From Botryllus schlosseri (lineage: Eukaryota), in contig CM119386.1 in assembly GCA_051294905.1 (NCBI GenBank), positions 5,022,001 to 5,086,000 of the forward strand: a stretch of DNA of 64,000 nucleotides, given 5' to 3'. The position numbers and the translations under genes were made by a program. Below the pieces are notes generated by a model, which worked only from the letters and a program-made list of their open reading frames with translations, was not told where the DNA came from and did not search any database. Below, one piece after another: positions 2,878 to 59,300 of the stretch (within the stretch, counting starts at the first letter, position 1; each line of letters opens with the position of its first letter).

Positions 2878-47655
<44,778 letters not shown>

Positions 47656-50922: not shown

Positions 50923-50936
50923 GTTGCTATAACAAC
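50923..50936. promoter_or_regulatory. RFX X-box upstream of CIMIP1
   Basis: GTTGCTATAACAAC fits the 14-bp X-box consensus RTHNYY-WT-RRNRAC and ends 70 bp before the CIMIP1 ATG, as is typical of ciliary genes. Confidence 0.7.
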
Positions 50937-51006: not shown

Positions 51007-52939
51007 ATGGCTGCCCCAGGTCCTAAAGTAGGGAGACAGGTTGCCGGTTGCAACTATGTAGCAAACGATGAAATATGGTCAGTATGATTCCATAATTTCA
51101 ACGCCGATGTATAATTCTTGGCTTGCTTTTGCAGGAAAAGTCATGTGCACATGGAATGGGCGGCATCAAAAAGATGGCCAAACAATTGGGGATTCATGAC
51201 ACAAACTTATCGCGAGGTTTGCTAATATATCAGTCAATAATCAATAACATACCATAGTCATAGTTAAGCGCCAAAAATCATTAAACCTTAAACCTTAGGC
51301 CAATGATACAATCGAAAATTGCATGGTATGGGTAACAGTGTGTTGTCTGATATCATGTGATCTGATAGTAGTGAGTACTGAGCGTAATTCTTTATAGGAT
51401 ATAAACTTATAAGTATATAGGTTATAAACTTAACTTTATATGATACAACATTTCAGTGTTCGTTCTTGGCCTAACAGGTTCAACAAGCGTACAATGATAA
51501 TTGCCTTTCAGATGTATTGATTGAATATGCTACTTCAATAGCATACTAGATTACATGAGTCTCATCAGATGTAGTCGAGAGATAAAGATATATATAGCAT
51601 GATAACTAAAGAGGTGTTCTGAAACATTCGAGATGTTTATACAATAGAAATGTAATATGGTCATACGTCACTTTGAACAGCGTGCAGGTATGTCCAGAGG
51701 ATATAACACACTGGGGGTGTCTGAAATGGTAACAAGAAGCCTTAAATTGTCATCTATTCTTTTGATCATGTCATATTCAATGGTTAAGTCTTCTAGAACA
51801 GGTAAAGAAGAGCCTGCAAACATATTTTGAATTGATCGTCACCTCCGATATAATGGAAGCGATTGAACCACAATCCGAAACTACTCATTTAGTGGTATCG
51901 GTACTTCAATGAATAGACTGTGATATAGCCTACTTGTATCACAGTATATCGTTTTCAAAATTTATTGAAAATTACGGCTCATCTCATTATTGATACTGCA
52001 CAGGTAGTAGCCATCATTCTTGATATTTGACAAAATAGAGAAAATTAGTTTTGGAGTATGGTTGCTCCAGGTCCGAAATTATGGACACAGGTTGCCAGTT
52101 GCAACAACACTGCAAACAATGTTCTATAAGTGCAGTGTTGAAAGCAGAGGCGTTAATCATAGACTAGGTTTTTTTCGGTATTTAACCAAGATGGACGTCT
52201 CTAGTTGTTTCAATTTTATGCAGCATTGCTTCAACAATTCTTGGGTACAGATTAGTTATTTCCCACATTCAATAGGGTGAATTCTTCAAAACATTACAAA
52301 ACCCAACTTGGGATAAGTCATGGAAATGCCATTTTCATTCAGATAGAAAACATAACTAACAATACCAGTTCTTCAGTTCTTCTATTTTGGTAATGTTAAT
52401 GATAACTTGGATTACCACTGCTTCCAAACTGGTGTATTTGTTTGTTTGTGATGGTTGAATTCATTCTGGCGTTGGACCTAATCCAAAATCCCATCCCATG
52501 GCATATTCAGCTCAAGATTAAAAGACAAATCTTAATAATAACTTAGCAAAAGGTGAAAACTCTGACAGTCTAACTGCCATTGTGCTCCATTAAAATACGA
52601 ACTCGTATGTTTCCAAAATGTGCATAATCCTCATCCATGCTAGTACCTCAAGCGGGAGCGTAACTGTCTCATCCCTTCAAACAGCTCGCTGAAACAGAAG
52701 AAAAGGGCCCGAAGAAGCCCAAAGTGGAACTCCCCGAGCAATTGAGGCTACCTCCCATAACCCCAATCGAGAAATACATAAAGGTCGGCAAGTCTCCACC
52801 TGTTCCGCAGACCACGACAAGTATGATCGGTTGGCGGTCCACGAAGAATGATTGCACGTTGGAAATATATGGGGGCTACGCAAAGGGAAAAGGGGGATTA
52901 ATAAAGCAATTAAATTGGCCGCGGGAAGGAATCATATAA
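51007..52939 (+). CDS. CIMIP1: Ciliary microtubule inner protein 1 (C20orf85 family); 3 exons, 135 aa
   Basis: Exons 51007-51077 (MAAPGPKVGRQVAGCNYVANDEIW, donor GTCAGT), 51135-51216 (KSHVHMEWAASKRWPNNWGFMTQTYRE, donor GTTTGC) and 52685-52939 (LAETEEKGPKKPKVELPEQLRLPPITPIEKYIKVGKSPPVPQTTTSMIGWRS...LNWPREGII*). Phases are consistent. It matches my recollection of C20orf85 motifs DEIW, WPQNWGF, KPKIELP, TPVEKYIK and SPPVPQTT..IGWRS. Confidence 0.9.
52058..52130 (+). pseudogene. Degenerate duplicate of CIMIP1 exon 1 inside CIMIP1 intron 2
   Basis: Reads MVAPGPKLWTQVASCNNTANNVL* versus exon 1 MAAPGPKVGRQVAGCNYVANDEIW. The nucleotide match to 51007-51077 is clear; the Trp codon and splice donor are lost. 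Confidence 0.75.
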
Positions 52940-54314
52940 AAAGTAATACACAGCGTCCATATTGCTTTGACTGATAGACGATAATTGATGTGTATGGAAA
53001 AAATTTACGAGACGTCCAAATTTTATTGCTCTCATCATTTTGTGAATTTACGTTTTTCAAGCTATTACACACGGTACAAGTCTAATGCACTTATGAGAGC
53101 TTCACTCTCAAATTTTGCCTCCAAGCCACTCTGAATGCTACGGTATATTTTAGTTAATTTGCATGTTTTCAACCCACTCACTCACAAGCCATATCGCTTT
53201 TGTAGCTACTAGATATAATTTTACCAATCTCCGCACTTCAAATAAGTAACGTTCCTGTTTCGTCCTGAAATCATGAGTTTGATTCCTCATTTCGCAATAT
53301 CAGCATGAATTAAGAATGTATTGCATTTCTGTTTTGAATGATTGTTGCCAATAATTTTTCGTACACTGTATTACGTTATGTGCCAACAATATAATGCATT
53401 GGTTGATTGTTTTGTATGTTAAATTTCTGTAACATTTGAGACAGTGTTGGGATGACTCAAATCACTGCCCTTAAACAACTTGATTTGACTGGGACTCACA
53501 AACGTTCAGTTGAATGGTTAAAAAGTTTTGTTTTACTTGCGACACAAGTTGGTCCTTTCTGGGTCATTTCAACGAAATTCTCTTACAATTTTATCTTCAG
53601 ACTAAAAAGGTCCGACTTGACTTCAACACCAATGAAATTGAATGAATGAGATTTTCTGGTCGATCATTGCTTGAATTTGGATGTACTCCGCTTACGATTA
53701 CCATTAAAGATCCAATTGCCTCCCAAAATTGGAAAAGGCTCGTCCAAATAATAATAATGAATCCATTCCTAATTCAACATATAAAATGGTAAAAGGTCGA
53801 CTTCAAAACCTACGTTGATATCTCGGGATGTTTTAGATTAAATTCACTAGATTGTTATGATAATATACATGCTGTATTGTAAATTATGATAGCTGTCATA
53901 TTCAATTGTTGGCACGTCCATTTTGATATTGTGTACACTCAATATTAATTCATTGTAGGGTGATACAGTGGACAGGTTTTATTTCACAACAATTGTGCTC
54001 TCTTAAGATCAGCTTTCAGCACGTTTGTATGATTTGATTATACTGAAAGTGGAGCTGACTGTAGAAGTATCTCTGAAAGTCGAGAGGATTGAATGTCAGC
54101 TTGATATGTGCAGAATATGTAGCTTTTTCTTCAATTAGCGTATGAAGACAGGGGCAGAGTTGTAGAACAGGGAACATTATCGTAATTCAACCTATGATTC
54201 AATTTAACTTTATCTCAAAAAAGCTGAATATGACACAATCATAACAACGTTTTCCATATCAAATAAGCAGATATTCATATAACGTAAATAATAGCGCCCG
54301 CATTTGCGAAAGTC

Positions 54315-55481
54315 ATGGAGAACTGCGCTCCACAAAGAACATCAAATTCTAAGCTACAATCAAAAATGCCAGACTCAACTGTTTCTGAACGACTTTCAAG
54401 CACAATGAAAGAACTGAGTATGAGAGAAGCACCTCAAAGTCTAAAAAATAATCATAAGTCTACTAGCAATACAAAGGTACAACTTGAGAACACTGCTTGT
54501 CGAATCCTTCGGCAGGAGGTTTCTGACGAGAGGTATGTACGACCACATGAAACACTGAATGAATATGCGCGCTTTCTCGGAATCATTCCTGGAAAAGAAG
54601 ATAATCTTATGTGGATTGCCAGAGAAGGAGTGAATGCCCCTCTGCCCACACATTGGAAATCCTGTCGAGATCATGATGGAGACATCTACTTCTTCAACTT
54701 TGAAACGGGAGAAAGTATTTGGGATCATCCGCTGGATAGCCATTACAAAGAAATGGTCTCGCAGGAAAGACAAAAGAATGAATTGGCTGGAAAACACATA
54801 GATTCTTTCAAAAAGGCTAATGATAAGAATACAGGCGGAGGCCAGATAATTTTGGAAGAAGACTATGACGAGAATTATGTCCCAACACAAGAAGAGTTGA
54901 ATGAATATGCGGTAGTTATTGGGATCAACCCGGAAAAGGAAGAGAATCTTATGTGGGTCGCCAAAGAAGGTATAAATGCCCCCCTTCCCACACATTGGAA
55001 ACCATGCCAAGATCATGAAGGGGATATCTACTATTTCAATTTTGACACTGGAGAAAGTATTTGGGATCATCCTTGTGATAAACATTACAAAGAATTGGTC
55101 TTAGTGGAAAGACGAAAGAAGGAACTGCCTGGAAATCGCGAAGATGAGTTGAAAAATGATGATGAAATTAGGACAGTCGGGAGTCAGATAATCCTGGAAG
55201 AAGACTACGATGAGAATTACGTGCCATCACAAAACGATTTGCATGAATATGCACGTGTTATTGGAATCATCCCCGAGAAAGAAGAGTATCTCATGTGGAT
55301 TGCCCGAGAAGGTATAAATGCCCGCCTTCCTCCGCATTGGAAACCCTGTCAAGATCATACCGGAGACATTTACTACTTCAATTTTTCGACGGGAGATAGT
55401 ATTTGGGATCACCCTTGTGATAAGCAGTTCAGAGAAACTGTGATACGGGAAAGACAAAAGAAAAATTTGACTGGGGAATAA
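54315..55481 (+). CDS. Intronless 388-aa protein with three tandem CEP164-type N-terminal (helical bundle + WW) modules
   Basis: Uninterrupted ORF with ATG in good context (aagtcATGG) and TAA. Three units at exact 114-aa spacing (W100/W214/W328) with consensus [14 protein letters not shown]...[45 protein letters not shown], which matches the CEP164 N-terminus (QLVLEEDYDETYIP...[40 protein letters not shown]). No coiled-coil C-terminus follows, so this is not canonical CEP164. Confidence 0.9.
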
Positions 55482-55522
55482 TGCATCAAATCCGATACTA
55501 CTTCGATCTGTCCAATAAGAGT

Positions 55523-55562
55523 TGAACGTTCATATGGCACAATGAACGTTCATATGGCACAA
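55523..55562 (+). repeat. Perfect 20-bp tandem duplication just after the stop of the triple-WW ORF
   Basis: TGAACGTTCATATGGCACAA occurs twice in tandem. Confidence 0.9.
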
Positions 55563-56387
55563 TATCTTTATTAGATTATAACTGTAGCTCTCCATTAACG
55601 ACACATCCGCAGAGCGATACAGAGATGTTCTTTTAAAGATTAGAAGCCATGCAATTCACCATGTTGATTGGAAAAGAGCTTACTACTCAAGCGTTCAATA
55701 TGGCAATATCACTGTGGCCAACTACGTTAACTATGGCCTTGGCACATACCTATTGCAATTACTAGGTGGAGTAGTTCGTGATCCGAATTCTAATATCGGT
55801 CATGAGATGAGTGATAGTGGTGATGGACGGACCATTGACAACAAAATAATTACAATCCATTCCACAACCAAGTACATACGATATCTAATTCGCCTATCGA
55901 CACATGGCACTTCATATTCATAGCTTTTTATGTTATCCTCTAATACAGTGGTGCCCAAGCTTTGTTTTCACTTTTTCTGGGCTGAAACGAGCCAAGCCTT
56001 CGATACTTCCAATCCAGTGTACACGTCCCTTATTCTGATGGGTGTTTGAAAGACTACACCTGGTCGCTTCTACTCCTAGCTATATTTCCATTTTTTGCAA
56101 CAATATTAGTTATTATAAACTGAACTGAGATTCCTATTGCAAGATACAAAATGGCGACTTTCAAATGCTTTATTACGGTACGACACACATCGTGCATGAA
56201 TACAGAAGCTAAGTGCACACCAACACAAGAGTGATCGACAAAATACAAACATCGTGTATAATGAAAAAAGCACCATTAAGCCATGTAAAGCAGCAGCAGA
56301 AAATTACAAACAGCCAGAGATTCCAACCACAGTGAAGAACAAGCATAGCAAGACAGTTTCCTCATCTCCCGATCGAAAGCAAGGGTG

Positions 56388-59300
56388 TCATTCGCCTTTG
56401 CCAGATAACTTAACCGAGATGCTGTCGATGCCTTCCGCTTGAATGACCAGAGTGCTGTCAAAGATGCCTTTACTGGTAGGTTTGAAAGTAACGGGAAGGC
56501 AAGCGTAAGACATCGGTCTGCAAAAATAGTATAAACTTATTAGCCTTTATAGATATTGGCAACACTGAAAATATATGGTCACGATTAGAATCAGTGCACC
56601 GAATGCATCTTATGACCATTAAGTGAATTTGGTCCTAACAAAAAATTTTCAATCATGACGGACACATACAATGGATCAAGTAGCCTACCGATATAGCATT
56701 TGTCACTTACAATTGATACAATGGAATTATCTGATATTTATTGTGGTACGGATGATTATGAACACGATATCCAGGCAAATCTGACCACAGGCTCGTCACC
56801 CTAATACAAGTTGCAAGGTAGAAAATGGCAGGCTTGCGGAGTTTTATCAAGTGCTTCTCACATAATCTCAAGCATACCTGATCGTGTGTCCTTGGTGAGT
56901 AATGTGAAACGGCAGTCTTACATTGAGAAATTTCACCTGAAATGGCGAGAACGGTAACATAGCTCAAGCGCCAAATGGAAGAATCAAAAAAGAATATTTA
57001 CGTTGTGCGATTCTCTACTTCGATTTTTCACCGGAATTTTGATCACAGACGAATCGTTCACAGCCGTGAGTGGAAATCGCACCTTGTCTTCAGACACATA
57101 GAGACCGTGTCTGAAATAACAAACAAACACAAAAAATTCACATATACATTTAAAAATTTTGCCACGCTAGCCGACTTACTCTTTAGCTTTTGCAGTTTGC
57201 GCGATAGGTTGAGGTCCTTTTTTGGAAGCTACTCCCTGTAAACAAGGAATCAGGTGTTAACACATTCAAAGACATCGTCAGGACAAACACGGTCTAATTC
57301 AACTGTGTGACTTGTTAATAATGAAGCTGCTGTTGTACAAGTTAATTTCAGACCAGACTTTCGATCAGTCACCTAGTAGCACAAATGTGAAGGTTATTGA
57401 CGGGAAATATCCAAGTTGAACTCACCCTTTATGTGTATGAATTGCAGCAAATTTTGGCTTGCAACACATACTTAGACATGCTAATATGACCTGCAGTATA
57501 TCCTTAATATTACAGATAATCATGCAGTTCGGCGTGCTGATATGCACTAGAACACACATTGGTTTCCCACCAAATTTTGTCAGAGACTCCTTTCAGAATT
57601 TTTTCAAGCTTGCGGACACCCACATTTTTTAGAATCATCCCAAGCAACTCTTACGCAAAACTATTAAGCATAGATCCGCGAATAACAAAGCTCGGCAAAC
57701 ACCCAAATTTAATGGTCTTATAAGCAGGGTCGTAACACCACCGAAAGACTGTTGGTCTTGGTCTGCATTTCACTGTCGACATATGGTTGTACTTCACATC
57801 CATGCGAAATAGATTGGATATAATGTTTATGCTCATTATGTCAATGTCCAGTGCACTAATGGATCCCTAGCAAAGTCCAGATGGGTCCGTGGGCCCTTAT
57901 TTGTGAATGGTTGTGATGATGATGTTGAATAGGAACACACACATACACTACCGAGTCTTACCGTACAATTGCTAGCATTGGCAGGTGCGTTCCATGAAAT
58001 CATTACACACCAATACAGACAACCTCTCACAGAAGCTCAACGTAGCAGTGGCCCAACGTCACCATAGGCGTAATATCATTACCATAAAATCCTACCTGCC
58101 CATTAACTTGAATTCGGACTTTACTGAGCGATAGCGCAGCGGTGTCGGCGGCTTCGTGATGCTACGAAAGAATAAGGAAACCAAATTTCAATCTATCGGA
58201 AATGAAATCTCATGATAACCTACCTCAAGATCCCAGAATTGGGAATACTGGCCCTCGCCAATCGGGCTGAAAGTGACGGGGATCTTCACCTTGACACCGG
58301 TTTCGAGAAGGCCGGAGGTATGCGAAAAGATGAAGGCCGCGTACGTGGTCCTGTAGAGATCTCCTGAAAAAGGGAACGGTACATTTAGGATATTGGTGAG
58401 AAAATCAGAAGGAACGGTGCTTCAATAAAGAAATTTAGAACCTAATTTGAAGAGCTACTTGGAGGTAGAGAACTTTGAAATATAATTAAAAAGTATATTC
58501 GTATTGAAATGAACCCGAATATTTTCGGCTGACACTCGTCAGGGGTAATTGTCAGCAGCTGGTAGAGAATTGGAAAGAATGTTGTATATCAACAACAGTA
58601 TCACCGAATGTTACGTCACCGGCATGAAATTTTGAATAATTGGGGGGAAGAGATAAAAGTTGACTCCAGGGTTGTAACCAAGTCACAAGGCTCTGAGTCA
58701 CAAGTCAATTTCACTTTTCTAGTCTTGACTCGAGTTAAGTCGAGTCATTGTCAATTAATCACAGAGTCCAAGTCATCGAGCAGAGGGTCCAAGTCCGAGT
58801 CATGGTATCATGACTCGAGTCCGAGTCCAAGTCATTGTGTTGGCTGCTCAGTCTAAAGGTAAAGTCTTGTTAAACTCACTTTATATGACTATGTTTGCTG
58901 ATATCGAATGTTTCACATTTATCATATACTAATTTTCCCCACTTTTAGCAGTTTCTGGTTGCATTTTCAAGTACCAGTACCAATCAGACGAAATCCCAGT
59001 AGGATGGTTACTTCACAATTCTTCGAAATTACAATGAAATGTCGGTCTTGGCCGTCTGAGTCCCGAGTCAATGACTTGGTTCGAGTCATGCGCAATGACT
59101 CGAGTCCAAGTCGAGTCAATACACAGATTGACTCGAGTCGAGTCATTTCCGTATTTTGAAAAAATGACTCGAGTTCTGAAAAAATGACTCGAGTCAAGTC
59201 GAGTCATCAGAAAATCGTGACTCGAGTCGAGTCATGACTCGAACCATTACAAACCTGGTCGACTTCAAATCTAATTTTGAATACTTTCTGACATGATATT

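What the first reader, a model, noticed from the sequence alone, without database searches (positions are those of the whole stretch)
54315..55481. Stand-alone protein of three tandem CEP164 TTBK2-binding modules
Seen: a 388-aa ORF with a roughly 60-aa S/K-rich leader, then three units at exact 114-aa (342-nt) period, each with a helical segment plus a complete WW motif (W114/W136/P139, W228/W250/P253, W342/W364/P367), then a stop with no coiled coil. Established: in CEP164 a single copy of this N-terminal module recruits tau-tubulin kinase TTBK2 to centriole distal appendages to license ciliogenesis, and the coiled-coil body anchors it there. Inference: an unanchored trivalent version could act as a multivalent TTBK scaffold or as a soluble decoy that tunes cilium or flagellum initiation. 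I know of no described protein with this architecture, but I cannot search.
Basis: partly seen in the sequence, partly recalled or inferred. Interest (0 to 1): 0.9.

Follow-up and report, generated by a model that had tools for sequence, protein, structure and literature searches.

The report
Soluble triple CEP164 head-domain gene
A sea-squirt genome carries a small, transcribed, selectively maintained gene made only of three copies of the CEP164 "head" that normally recruits the cilium-licensing kinase TTBK2. It has none of the parts that anchor CEP164 to the centriole, so it is a plausible natural soluble competitor for that kinase, though no function has been tested.

Summary
Window 54315-55481(+) is an intact 388-aa ORF: a disordered S/K/T-rich leader, then three 114-aa units. 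Each unit is a complete CEP164 N-terminal domain, a WW domain inserted in a three-helix bundle (E 6e-41 to human CEP164 1-109; predicted fold rmsd 1.7 A).

RNA assemblies from two studies cover about 54269-56000 colinearly, with no splice joints and no depth in the flanks or in neighbouring introns. It is therefore a stand-alone single-exon transcript, not an exon of CEP164.

The units group with ascidian CEP164 heads, and ascidian CEP164 is itself intronless, so no separate retroposition can be inferred. The gene lies between CIMIP1 and CEP192. The same gap in Styela clava holds no such sequence, so the gene is lineage-restricted.

Unit-to-unit dN/dS is 0.15-0.21 (bootstrap upper bound 0.38). 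All four TTBK2-groove aromatic residues are kept in every unit.

Uncharacterised predicted proteins with 2-4 tandem heads exist in oyster, a cichlid and many protists.

The decoy or scaffold function is inference. It is supported by published dominant-negative effects of CEP164 N-terminal fragments. Verdict: new variant of a known kind, moderate interest.

The parts
54269..54314 (+). 5' untranslated leader of the transcript. An AG at 54266-54267 follows a pyrimidine-rich tract, so this may be a trans-splice acceptor or a transcription start. An in-frame stop lies at 54285-54287.
   Evidence: RNA contig X1 record 2 begins at 54269, and depth is zero over 53876-54269. Sequence read.
54315..55481 (+). 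Complete coding sequence, 388 aa plus stop.
   Evidence: RNA contigs from two studies show no indels or stops inside it.
54315..54494 (+). Leader, aa 1-60: S/K/T/N-rich, predicted disordered, with no homology found.
   Evidence: pLDDT 35-41. No Pfam or PDB match. Composition.
54495..54836 (+). Unit 1 (aa 61-174): a CEP164 N-terminal domain with a degenerate N-terminal strand (Q11->R, Y74->F, C88->L, P64->S) plus a linker.
54837..55178 (+). Unit 2 (aa 175-288): a complete CEP164 N-terminal domain plus a disordered linker.
   Evidence: 69% identical to the nearest ascidian CEP164 head.
55179..55478 (+). Unit 3 (aa 289-388): a complete CEP164 N-terminal domain, ending at the stop codon.
   Evidence: (E 6e-41 to 7nwj).
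55482..56000 (+). 3' untranslated region as far as RNA contigs reach. It contains a 20-nt tandem repeat at 55523-55563 that has one copy fewer in both RNA assemblies. No AATAAA or ATTAAA was found.
52683..53828 (+). Upstream neighbour: last exon and 3'UTR of CIMIP1 (C20orf85/LLC1). The previous exon ends at 51214. Highly expressed.
   Evidence: Pfam PF14945 at E 3.5e-24. 87% identical to Styela clava CIMIP1-like. Depth 85-240. Exon join.
56158..56517 (-). Downstream neighbour: last exon of CEP192, convergent with the ORF. Further exons at 56878-56934, 57000-57110, 57183-57234 and 58095-58163, with domains D5-D7 further upstream to about 63627.
   Evidence: Spliced RNA contigs with CT..AC joints. 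Pfam Cep192_D5 to D8.

Best explanation
SHOWN. This is a real, transcribed, single-exon gene in an ascidian (sea-squirt) genome. It encodes a disordered leader followed by three independently folded, flexibly linked copies of the CEP164 N-terminal domain, which is a WW domain inserted in a three-helix bundle. It is a paralogue at a new locus, between CIMIP1 and CEP192. It derives from the first ~115 codons of the already intronless ascidian CEP164 gene, triplicated in tandem. It is absent from the syntenic gap of Styela clava. The units have since evolved under purifying selection, about ten times weaker than on the canonical head.

INFERRED. All residues that form the two proline-binding grooves (Y73, W84, F75, F77), plus S82 and the structural P59/W62/H86/P87, are kept in every unit. 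Each unit therefore probably still binds a TTBK2-type proline-rich motif. Units 2 and 3 should bind fully; unit 1 should bind more weakly, because its N-terminal strand is degenerate. The protein lacks the coiled coil and the C-terminal centriole-targeting region, so it cannot sit on distal appendages. The most likely action is as a soluble, multivalent competitor or buffer that holds TTBK2 away from centriolar CEP164 (and from EB1). That would damp or time ciliogenesis in the cells that express it. It would be a natural counterpart of the dominant-negative CEP164 N-terminal fragments used experimentally.
For: Identity and fold of the units: three modules at pLDDT >90, linkers <50, pTM 0.35; 7o3b/7o0s, TMt 0.78-0.89, rmsd 1.7 A, 63% identity.

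Transcript: contigs in X1 (54269-54659, 54634-56000) and X4 (54511-54816, 54839-55728) are colinear with no joints. Depth is 0 in the flanking intergenic DNA and in CEP192 introns, so this is not DNA carry-over. Eleven RNA-type runs from five studies hold 28-59% of the words of the 2-kb stretch.

Selection: omega is 0.15-0.21 and dS 0.9-1.2 between units, with bootstrap upper bounds no higher than 0.38. The frame is intact in both RNA assemblies.

Origin: the three units form a clade (100/99) nested with ascidian CEP164 heads. The nearest full-length proteins are Clavelina, Phallusia and Ciona CEP164. Canonical ascidian CEP164 is intronless. CIMIP1 and CEP192 are convergent neighbours in Styela clava too, but its gap has no head-domain sequence.

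Binding residues: alignment A1, read against the mutational and structural data of PMC8752127.

Dominant-negative precedent, KD ~60 uM per head, avidity through self-association, and block of EB1 engagement: PMC8752127.
Against: No binding, localisation or phenotype data exist.

Expression is low: depth about 6 against 85-240 for CIMIP1 and 20-57 for CEP192. The gene is almost absent from two deep raw RNA runs.

The strand of the transcript is not shown directly, because contigs are unstranded and the raw libraries look unstranded. No canonical poly(A) signal was found.

The units evolve much faster than canonical heads (omega 0.15-0.21 against 0.013; long branches). They share derived changes in the WW beta1-beta2 loop (QDH.GD against QDT.GD) and have lost D10, which salt-bridges TTBK2 R1076 in human. 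Ligand specificity may therefore have shifted. However, the closest canonical ascidian head (P0133) also lacks D10.

Polymorphisms seen in RNA contigs are 5 non-synonymous to 4 synonymous, including Y298D and C368S (the list is incomplete). That is compatible with weak present-day constraint.

I could not check for TTBK2 or its motif in this species.
Confidence: 0.42

Rival explanations
1. Positive scaffold. The trivalent array clusters TTBK2 (or TTBK2 plus another proline-rich partner). It could promote kinase trans-activation, or deliver TTBK2 to a site specified by the disordered leader, rather than sequestering it.
For: The groove residues are conserved as in the best explanation. The beads-on-a-string geometry with flexible linkers suits multivalent bridging. 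TTBK2 and CEP164 self-associate, and avidity matters (PMC8752127).
Against: [quoted passage not shown] No targeting motif or domain was detected in the leader. Over-expressed N-terminal fragments inhibit rather than promote cilia.
Confidence: 0.18
2. Neofunctionalised binder. The copies kept the fold and the grooves but now recognise other proline-rich ligands, so the gene has left the TTBK2 pathway.
For: The evolutionary rate is about ten times that of canonical heads. A long stem branch leads to the unit clade. Derived substitutions are shared by all units in the WW loop and helix 3, and D10 is lost. Independent head-only arrays in oyster and protists hint at functions of their own.
Against: The four groove aromatics, S82 and Q11 (units 2 and 3) are precisely the TTBK2-contact set. 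The gene sits between two centrosome or cilium genes, though that may be coincidence.
Confidence: 0.2
3. A young, lineage-restricted duplicate with little or no present function. It would be transcribed at a low level from permissive chromatin between two active genes and be drifting towards loss.
For: Low depth, and near absence in two deep runs. Absence from the syntenic site in Styela clava, and no annotated orthologue in any ascidian proteome searched. A 5:4 non-synonymous to synonymous polymorphism ratio that includes conserved positions. A partly degenerate unit 1.
Against: The 1167-nt frame is intact across three units that have diverged to dS about 1. Omega is 0.15-0.21 with upper bounds no higher than 0.38. 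There are no frameshifts or stops in two further individuals' transcripts. All fold-critical residues are kept.
Confidence: 0.15
4. The ORF is an exon or mis-assembled piece of the canonical CEP164 gene, or an assembly artefact of a collapsed or expanded repeat.
For: None found. Tandem copies of CEP164 5' exons do occur in other assemblies: the Potamilus locus L001 and the cichlid model P0002 with two identical units.
Against: Independent RNA assemblies reproduce all three units colinearly, with a stop codon and untranslated regions. The units differ by 22-29% at the nucleotide level, so they cannot be collapsed or expanded copies. The canonical ascidian CEP164 lies at a different, conserved locus next to a UPF0004/radical-SAM gene. 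The window has no other CEP164-like sequence.
Confidence: 0.02

Closest known systems
Human CEP164 N-terminal domain (residues 1-109; PDB 7NWJ, 7O0S, 7O06, 7O3B with TTBK2 peptide)
   Same: The same fold: a WW domain inserted in a three-helix bundle. Identity is 59-63%, with Y73, F75, F77, W84, S82, P59, W62, H86 and P87 all retained.
   Different: There are three copies in tandem instead of one. No coiled coil or C-terminal centriole-targeting region follows. D10 is not kept. Unit 1 lacks Q11 and has a degenerate first strand.
Canonical ascidian CEP164 (Clavelina lepadiformis XP_076810122.1, Phallusia mammillata CAB3229941.1, Ciona intestinalis XP_018666680; 1016-1066 aa)
   Same: The closest relatives of the units (66-74% identity) and the inferred parent. 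They are also intronless, and each unit starts at the parent's residue 3-4.
   Different: The canonical genes have one head plus a ~900-aa body. Their heads are 78-89% identical to each other and under far stronger constraint (omega 0.013). They lie at a different locus, next to a UPF0004/radical-SAM gene.
Crassostrea gigas LOC105317981 (predicted, uncharacterised; 3- and 4-unit isoforms)
   Same: A short protein made of tandem complete CEP164 heads, with no long body.
   Different: An independent expansion: the oyster units form their own clade. Spacing is ~160 aa rather than 114 aa. There is a short C-terminal helical tail. Its gene structure was not examined.
Experimental CEP164 N-terminal (WW-containing) fragments that act as dominant negatives on ciliogenesis
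   Same: Head-only protein without centriole anchoring. Published over-expression blocks cilium formation, probably by competing for TTBK2 (PMC8752127 introduction, citing Schmidt 2012 and Cajanek & Nigg 2014).
   Different: Those are artificial, monovalent constructs. This is a genome-encoded, trivalent, selectively maintained gene.
Two-head proteins of protists (MMETSP, EukProt and metagenome entries of ~300 aa, e.g. P0006, P0009-P0019)
   Same: Stand-alone tandem CEP164-type heads that end right after the last unit.
   Different: Two units, with unit-1 and unit-2 orthology across species, so they form an old conserved family. They lie outside the metazoan clade. Their function is unknown.

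Membership tests
CEP164 (canonical distal-appendage protein) | N-terminal domain: a WW domain inserted in a three-helix bundle | tested here: met
   E 6e-41 to 7nwj. Three modules at pLDDT >90. Foldseek TMt 0.78-0.89, rmsd 1.7 A. Present three times.
CEP164 (canonical distal-appendage protein) | TTBK2-contact residues: XP groove Y73/W84, XP2 groove F75/F77, Q11 | tested here: met
   The four aromatics are invariant in all units. Q11 is kept in units 2 and 3 and is R in unit 1 (against PMC8752127).
CEP164 (canonical distal-appendage protein) | Long central coiled coil | tested here: not met
   The ORF stops 100 aa into unit 3. The stop codon lies inside colinear transcripts. The model has no long helix beyond the bundle.
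CEP164 (canonical distal-appendage protein) | C-terminal centriole-targeting region | tested here: not met
   Absent from the ORF. No other CEP164-like sequence is in the window.
CEP164 (canonical distal-appendage protein) | Physical binding of TTBK2 and localisation at the mother centriole | not testable with these tools
   Needs biochemistry and imaging.
WW domain (Pfam PF00397) | Score above the gathering threshold; two Trp and a Pro at the signature positions | tested here: met
   92.1 bits against 26.9, in 3 stretches. W/W/P positions verified.
Processed retrogene | Lacks the parental gene's introns | tested here: inconclusive
   Mussel and teleost CEP164 heads have two introns at shared positions, and the ORF has none. 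However, the ascidian parent gene is itself intronless in Ciona, Clavelina and P0133, so this feature cannot discriminate.
Processed retrogene | Poly(A) remnant and target-site duplications; a 3'-biased copy | tested here: not met
   No A-tract is seen after the ORF. The copy is the 5' ~115 codons of the parent, not the 3' end. Target-site duplications were not searched for, and at dS about 1 they would have decayed.
Tandem-WW supramodule scaffolds (KIBRA, MAGI, YAP, PRPF40 type) | Closely apposed WW domains that pack together and bind one bipartite ligand | tested here: not met
   The WW domains are ~114 aa apart, each embedded in its own helix bundle. Linkers have pLDDT <50 and pTM is 0.35. 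Matches to those structures have TM <0.45 and rmsd >13 A.

The most novel reading that the evidence does not exclude
A genome-encoded, trivalent 'TTBK2 trap'. On this reading, an ascidian lineage turned the kinase-recruiting head of CEP164 into a soluble multivalent inhibitor or timer of ciliogenesis. Head-only arrays that arose independently in oyster, fish and protists would then represent a recurrent, so far unrecognised class of natural regulators of the CEP164-TTBK2 step.
Probability: 0.25. Interest if true: 0.75.

Novelty: new variant of a known kind. Interest (0 to 1): 0.5.

Why it matters
Recruitment of TTBK2 by CEP164 is the licensing step of cilium assembly, and its failure causes human ciliopathies. 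No endogenous soluble antagonist of this step turned up in my literature searches; inhibition has only been achieved with artificial N-terminal fragments. A natural, selectively maintained, trivalent head-only protein would offer three things. First, a ready-made test of whether cells regulate ciliogenesis by competition for TTBK2. Second, a natural experiment on avidity for a 60 uM interaction. Third, a tractable system, since ascidian embryos can be electroporated. The independent appearance of similar arrays in other eukaryotes suggests the solution is reachable and possibly useful. If the gene proves functionless, it remains a clean example of a young domain-array gene born from the 5' end of an essential gene.

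Tried and rejected
(1) Retrogene origin. I first inferred retroposition because mussel (L001) and teleost (L002) CEP164 heads have two introns at shared positions. I rejected this as evidence after finding that Ciona, Clavelina and P0133 CEP164 are intronless over their full length.

(2) Giant multi-stretch hits of the representative search (12-23 stretches, including the diatom Epithemia). They looked like huge head arrays, but the unit HMM shows they match only the WW part, so they are not head arrays.

(3) Several locus look-ups failed or returned no DNA.

(4) The ESM Atlas gave only single-head fragments at sub-threshold scores.

(5) Searches of earlier scan notes for CEP164, WW and TTBK found nothing, so the genome's own canonical CEP164 was not located.

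(6) An RFX X-box scan found no good site near the ORF start. The only good palindrome lies upstream of CIMIP1.

(7) No AATAAA or ATTAAA occurs in the 3' region, and the libraries laid were unstranded, so the transcript's strand rests on the ORF alone.

(8) dN/dS of the units against canonical heads could not be computed because dS is saturated.

(9) Two literature searches found no paper on natural tandem-head CEP164 paralogues.

Full report
OBSERVATION

The ORF at 54315-55481 (+) is real: 388 codons from ATG to TAA. An in-frame stop lies 30 nt upstream of the ATG (sequence). Tandem Repeats Finder reports a 342-nt period, 2.7 copies, 78% matches and 1% indels.

Pfam finds three WW domains (92 bits against a cut-off of 26.9). 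Each 114-aa unit is more than a WW domain. Residues 288-386 align end to end with human CEP164 1-109 (PDB 7nwj and 7o3b) at E 6e-41.

An AlphaFold2 model, built on an alignment of multi-unit relatives, gives three modules at pLDDT >90. Each has helix, helix, three-stranded WW, then a long helix. The leader (1-63) and the linkers (162-174, 277-285) are below pLDDT 50, and pTM is 0.35, which means beads on a string. Foldseek matches a module to the CEP164 N-terminal-domain crystal structures with TM 0.78-0.89, rmsd 1.7 A and 63% identity. Classical tandem-WW proteins match only at the level of a single WW domain.

IS IT A STAND-ALONE, EXPRESSED GENE?

Eleven RNA-type runs from five studies hold 28-59% of the sampled words of window 54000-56000. 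I laid two assembled runs from different studies and two raw RNA runs on 52300-58200.

- Contigs cover 54269-54659 and 54634-56000 (X1), and 54511-54816 and 54839-55728 (X4). All are colinear with the genome, with no joints and no unmatched ends.
- Depth is zero between 53876 and 54269 and inside the introns of the downstream gene. The signal is therefore RNA, not DNA carry-over.
- The same contig sets show properly spliced neighbours.
- The stop codon and about 520 nt of 3' sequence lie inside the transcript.

So the ORF is not an exon of a longer CEP164. The window contains no other CEP164-like sequence (tblastn with 120 relatives).

Caveats:
- Depth is low: about 6, against 85-240 for the upstream gene and 20-57 for the downstream gene.
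- The two deep raw runs show only a few reads (X15) or none (X19).
- Contigs and these libraries carry no strand information.
- No canonical poly(A) signal is present.
- The contig start at 54269 lies two bases after an AG that follows a pyrimidine-rich tract. In an ascidian this could be an SL trans-splice acceptor, which I could not test.

WHERE IT COMES FROM

The length-restricted homologue search returned only short proteins. The best single-unit identities were 64-73%, to molluscs and fish. The unrestricted representative search showed that the nearest full-length proteins are 1016-1066-aa CEP164s of ascidians: Clavelina lepadiformis 74%, an unnamed ENA protein 73%, Phallusia mammillata 71% and Ciona intestinalis 68%.

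A careful maximum-likelihood tree of 40 head domains puts the three window units in one clade (100/99). That clade is nested with the ascidian canonical heads (87/91). The oyster and cichlid multi-unit proteins each form separate clades (the larger quick tree agrees).

The neighbours confirm the taxon. The upstream gene is CIMIP1 (C20orf85/LLC1; Pfam PF14945), 87% identical to Styela clava. The downstream convergent gene is CEP192, domains D5-D8. This agrees with an earlier scan note that called this genome an ascidian.

I first read the absence of introns as a sign of retroposition. Mussel and teleost CEP164 heads are split by two introns at the same positions: after the first strand, and after WKPC. 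That inference fails. The canonical CEP164 genes of Ciona, Clavelina and the unnamed relative are single uninterrupted ORFs of 3201, 3174 and 3051 nt. The parent was already intronless.

Each unit begins at the parent's residue 3-4 ([13 protein letters not shown]) and runs to about residue 115. The gene is therefore a copy of the 5' ~115 codons of CEP164, triplicated in tandem, with a new leader. Whether the first copy was made through DNA or RNA cannot be told.

The canonical locus lies next to a UPF0004/radical-SAM gene in both Ciona and Clavelina. The window ORF is elsewhere. Styela clava has the same CIMIP1 -> <- CEP192 arrangement, but its 1.9-kb gap contains no head-domain sequence. The Ciona CIMIP1 locus has none either. 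No ascidian proteome in the databases has an annotated orthologue. The gene is therefore lineage-restricted.

SELECTION

Between units, dN is 0.16-0.26 and dS 0.9-1.2, giving omega 0.15-0.21 (three methods). Codon-bootstrap 97.5% bounds are 0.29-0.38. The copies are old and have been kept under purifying selection.

The constraint is about ten times weaker than on canonical heads. P0133 against Clavelina gives dN 0.06 and omega 0.013, with dS saturated. The units also sit on long branches.

The RNA contigs of two other individuals carry nine listed substitutions in the ORF: four synonymous and five non-synonymous (K256R, D277N, Y298D, C368S, T375I). None is an indel or a stop. That list is truncated by the tool and too short for a test, but it does not suggest strong present-day constraint.

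FUNCTION: WHAT IS SHOWN AND WHAT IS INFERRED

Rosa e Silva et al. 2022 (PMC8752127) report the following.
- The human head binds TTBK2 1074-1087 with KD ~60 uM.
- Binding goes through an XP groove (Y73, W84) and an XP2 groove (F75, F77).
- There are contributions from the N-terminal strand (D10, Q11; deleting residues 1-18 weakens binding to ~270 uM) and from S82.
- P59, W62, H86 and P87 hold the WW domain to the bundle, and R93 stabilises the bundle.
- Head binding blocks EB1 engagement by TTBK2.
- Over-expressed N-terminal fragments are dominant negative for cilium formation.

In alignment A1, Y73, F75, F77, W84, S82, P59, W62, H86 and P87 are identical in all three units. R93 is K, K and R in units 1, 2 and 3. 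Q11 is kept in units 2 and 3. Unit 1 has R at Q11, F at Y74, L at C88 and a degenerate first strand. D10 is lost in all units, but also in the closest canonical ascidian head. All units share derived changes in the WW beta1-beta2 loop (QDH.GD).

The best-supported mechanism is therefore a soluble protein with two full and one weakened TTBK2-type binding sites. It cannot reach distal appendages and would compete with centriolar CEP164. Every step from "binds TTBK2" onward is inference.

Rivals, in order of weight:
- Neofunctionalisation to other proline-rich ligands, favoured by the rate acceleration.
- A positive scaffold role.
- A nearly functionless young duplicate, favoured by low expression and restricted distribution.

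An artefact or CEP164-exon reading is excluded.

COMPARISON WITH WHAT IS KNOWN

This is not a CEP164 orthologue, because the coiled coil and the C-terminal targeting region are absent. It is a CEP164-head-only paralogue.

The architecture is not unique. Among 257 retrieved relatives, 33 have two or more near-complete heads. Those with three or more are Crassostrea gigas LOC105317981 (3- and 4-unit isoforms), a Pelmatolapia mariae model mis-named NEDD4-like (two of its three units are identical, so it is a very recent duplication or an assembly or model artefact), and one protist transcript. About 25 proteins of ~300 aa from protists or metagenomes have two heads, with unit-1 and unit-2 orthology across species.

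The expansions are independent of one another. The mussel Potamilus also shows a 6.2-kb tandem triplication of the CEP164 5' exon block. The giant 12-23-stretch hits are WW-only arrays, not head arrays.

My two literature searches found no paper describing such proteins.

VERDICT

The architecture claim is right, but similar uncharacterised predictions exist elsewhere. The gene is real, expressed, constrained and lineage-restricted. Its function as a TTBK2 decoy is plausible but untested. I rate it a new variant of a known kind, with interest 0.5.

Noticed in passing
L003:3001-6051, L004:3001-6174, L007:2001-5201: The full-length canonical CEP164 genes of three ascidians (an unnamed ENA contig, Clavelina lepadiformis, Ciona intestinalis) are single uninterrupted ORFs. 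Mussel (L001) and teleost (L002) CEP164 heads are split by two introns at shared positions. The whole ascidian CEP164 therefore looks like an ancient intron-less replacement, by retrogene or by complete intron loss. In Ciona and Clavelina it is followed by the same UPF0004/radical-SAM gene.
   Followed up: partly
The CIMIP1 -> <- CEP192 convergence is conserved in Styela clava (L005), so only the middle gene is new.
   Followed up: yes
window 50923-50936: A near-palindromic RFX X-box-like site, GTTGCTATAACAAC, lies about 200 nt upstream of the CIMIP1 start codon. That fits a ciliary gene promoter. No comparable site lies near the triple-head gene.
   Followed up: no
window 55523-55563: A perfect 20-nt tandem duplication in the 3' untranslated region is present as a single copy in both RNA assemblies (20 nt left out). 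It is a length polymorphism between individuals.
   Followed up: partly
window 57110-57183: CEP192 shows alternative acceptor use at one intron: it skips 69 or 72 nt, with TCC between the sides. This changes the protein by one codon in both RNA assemblies.
   Followed up: no
window about 5000-47300, - strand: A large CHD-type chromatin remodeller gene fills most of the window. It includes a SNF2 helicase C-terminal fragment at 29707-30105, a CHD6-9-like SANT/SLIDE-type exon at 24977-25396, and an 861-aa P/Q/M-rich exon at 44694-47279. I identified it by reading the translations only.
   Followed up: no
window 11246-11967, - strand: Two overlapping ORFs (11617-11967 and 11246-11668). The first begins with a THAP-type zinc-finger signature (CxxC ... 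CxxH and a PVPTI motif), so this is probably a THAP9-like transposase remnant inside an intron of the CHD gene.
   Followed up: no
L001:8001-22000: In the mussel Potamilus streckersoni, the block of CEP164 5' exons that encodes the head is repeated three times at a ~6.2-kb period with near identity. The annotated 278-aa model strings parts of the copies together. This is either a real recent tandem duplication or an assembly artefact.
   Followed up: partly
window 54441-55085, - strand: A 214-aa antisense ORF overlaps units 1-2. It is most simply a by-product of the repeated, stop-poor coding sequence on the + strand. I did not examine it further.
   Followed up: no
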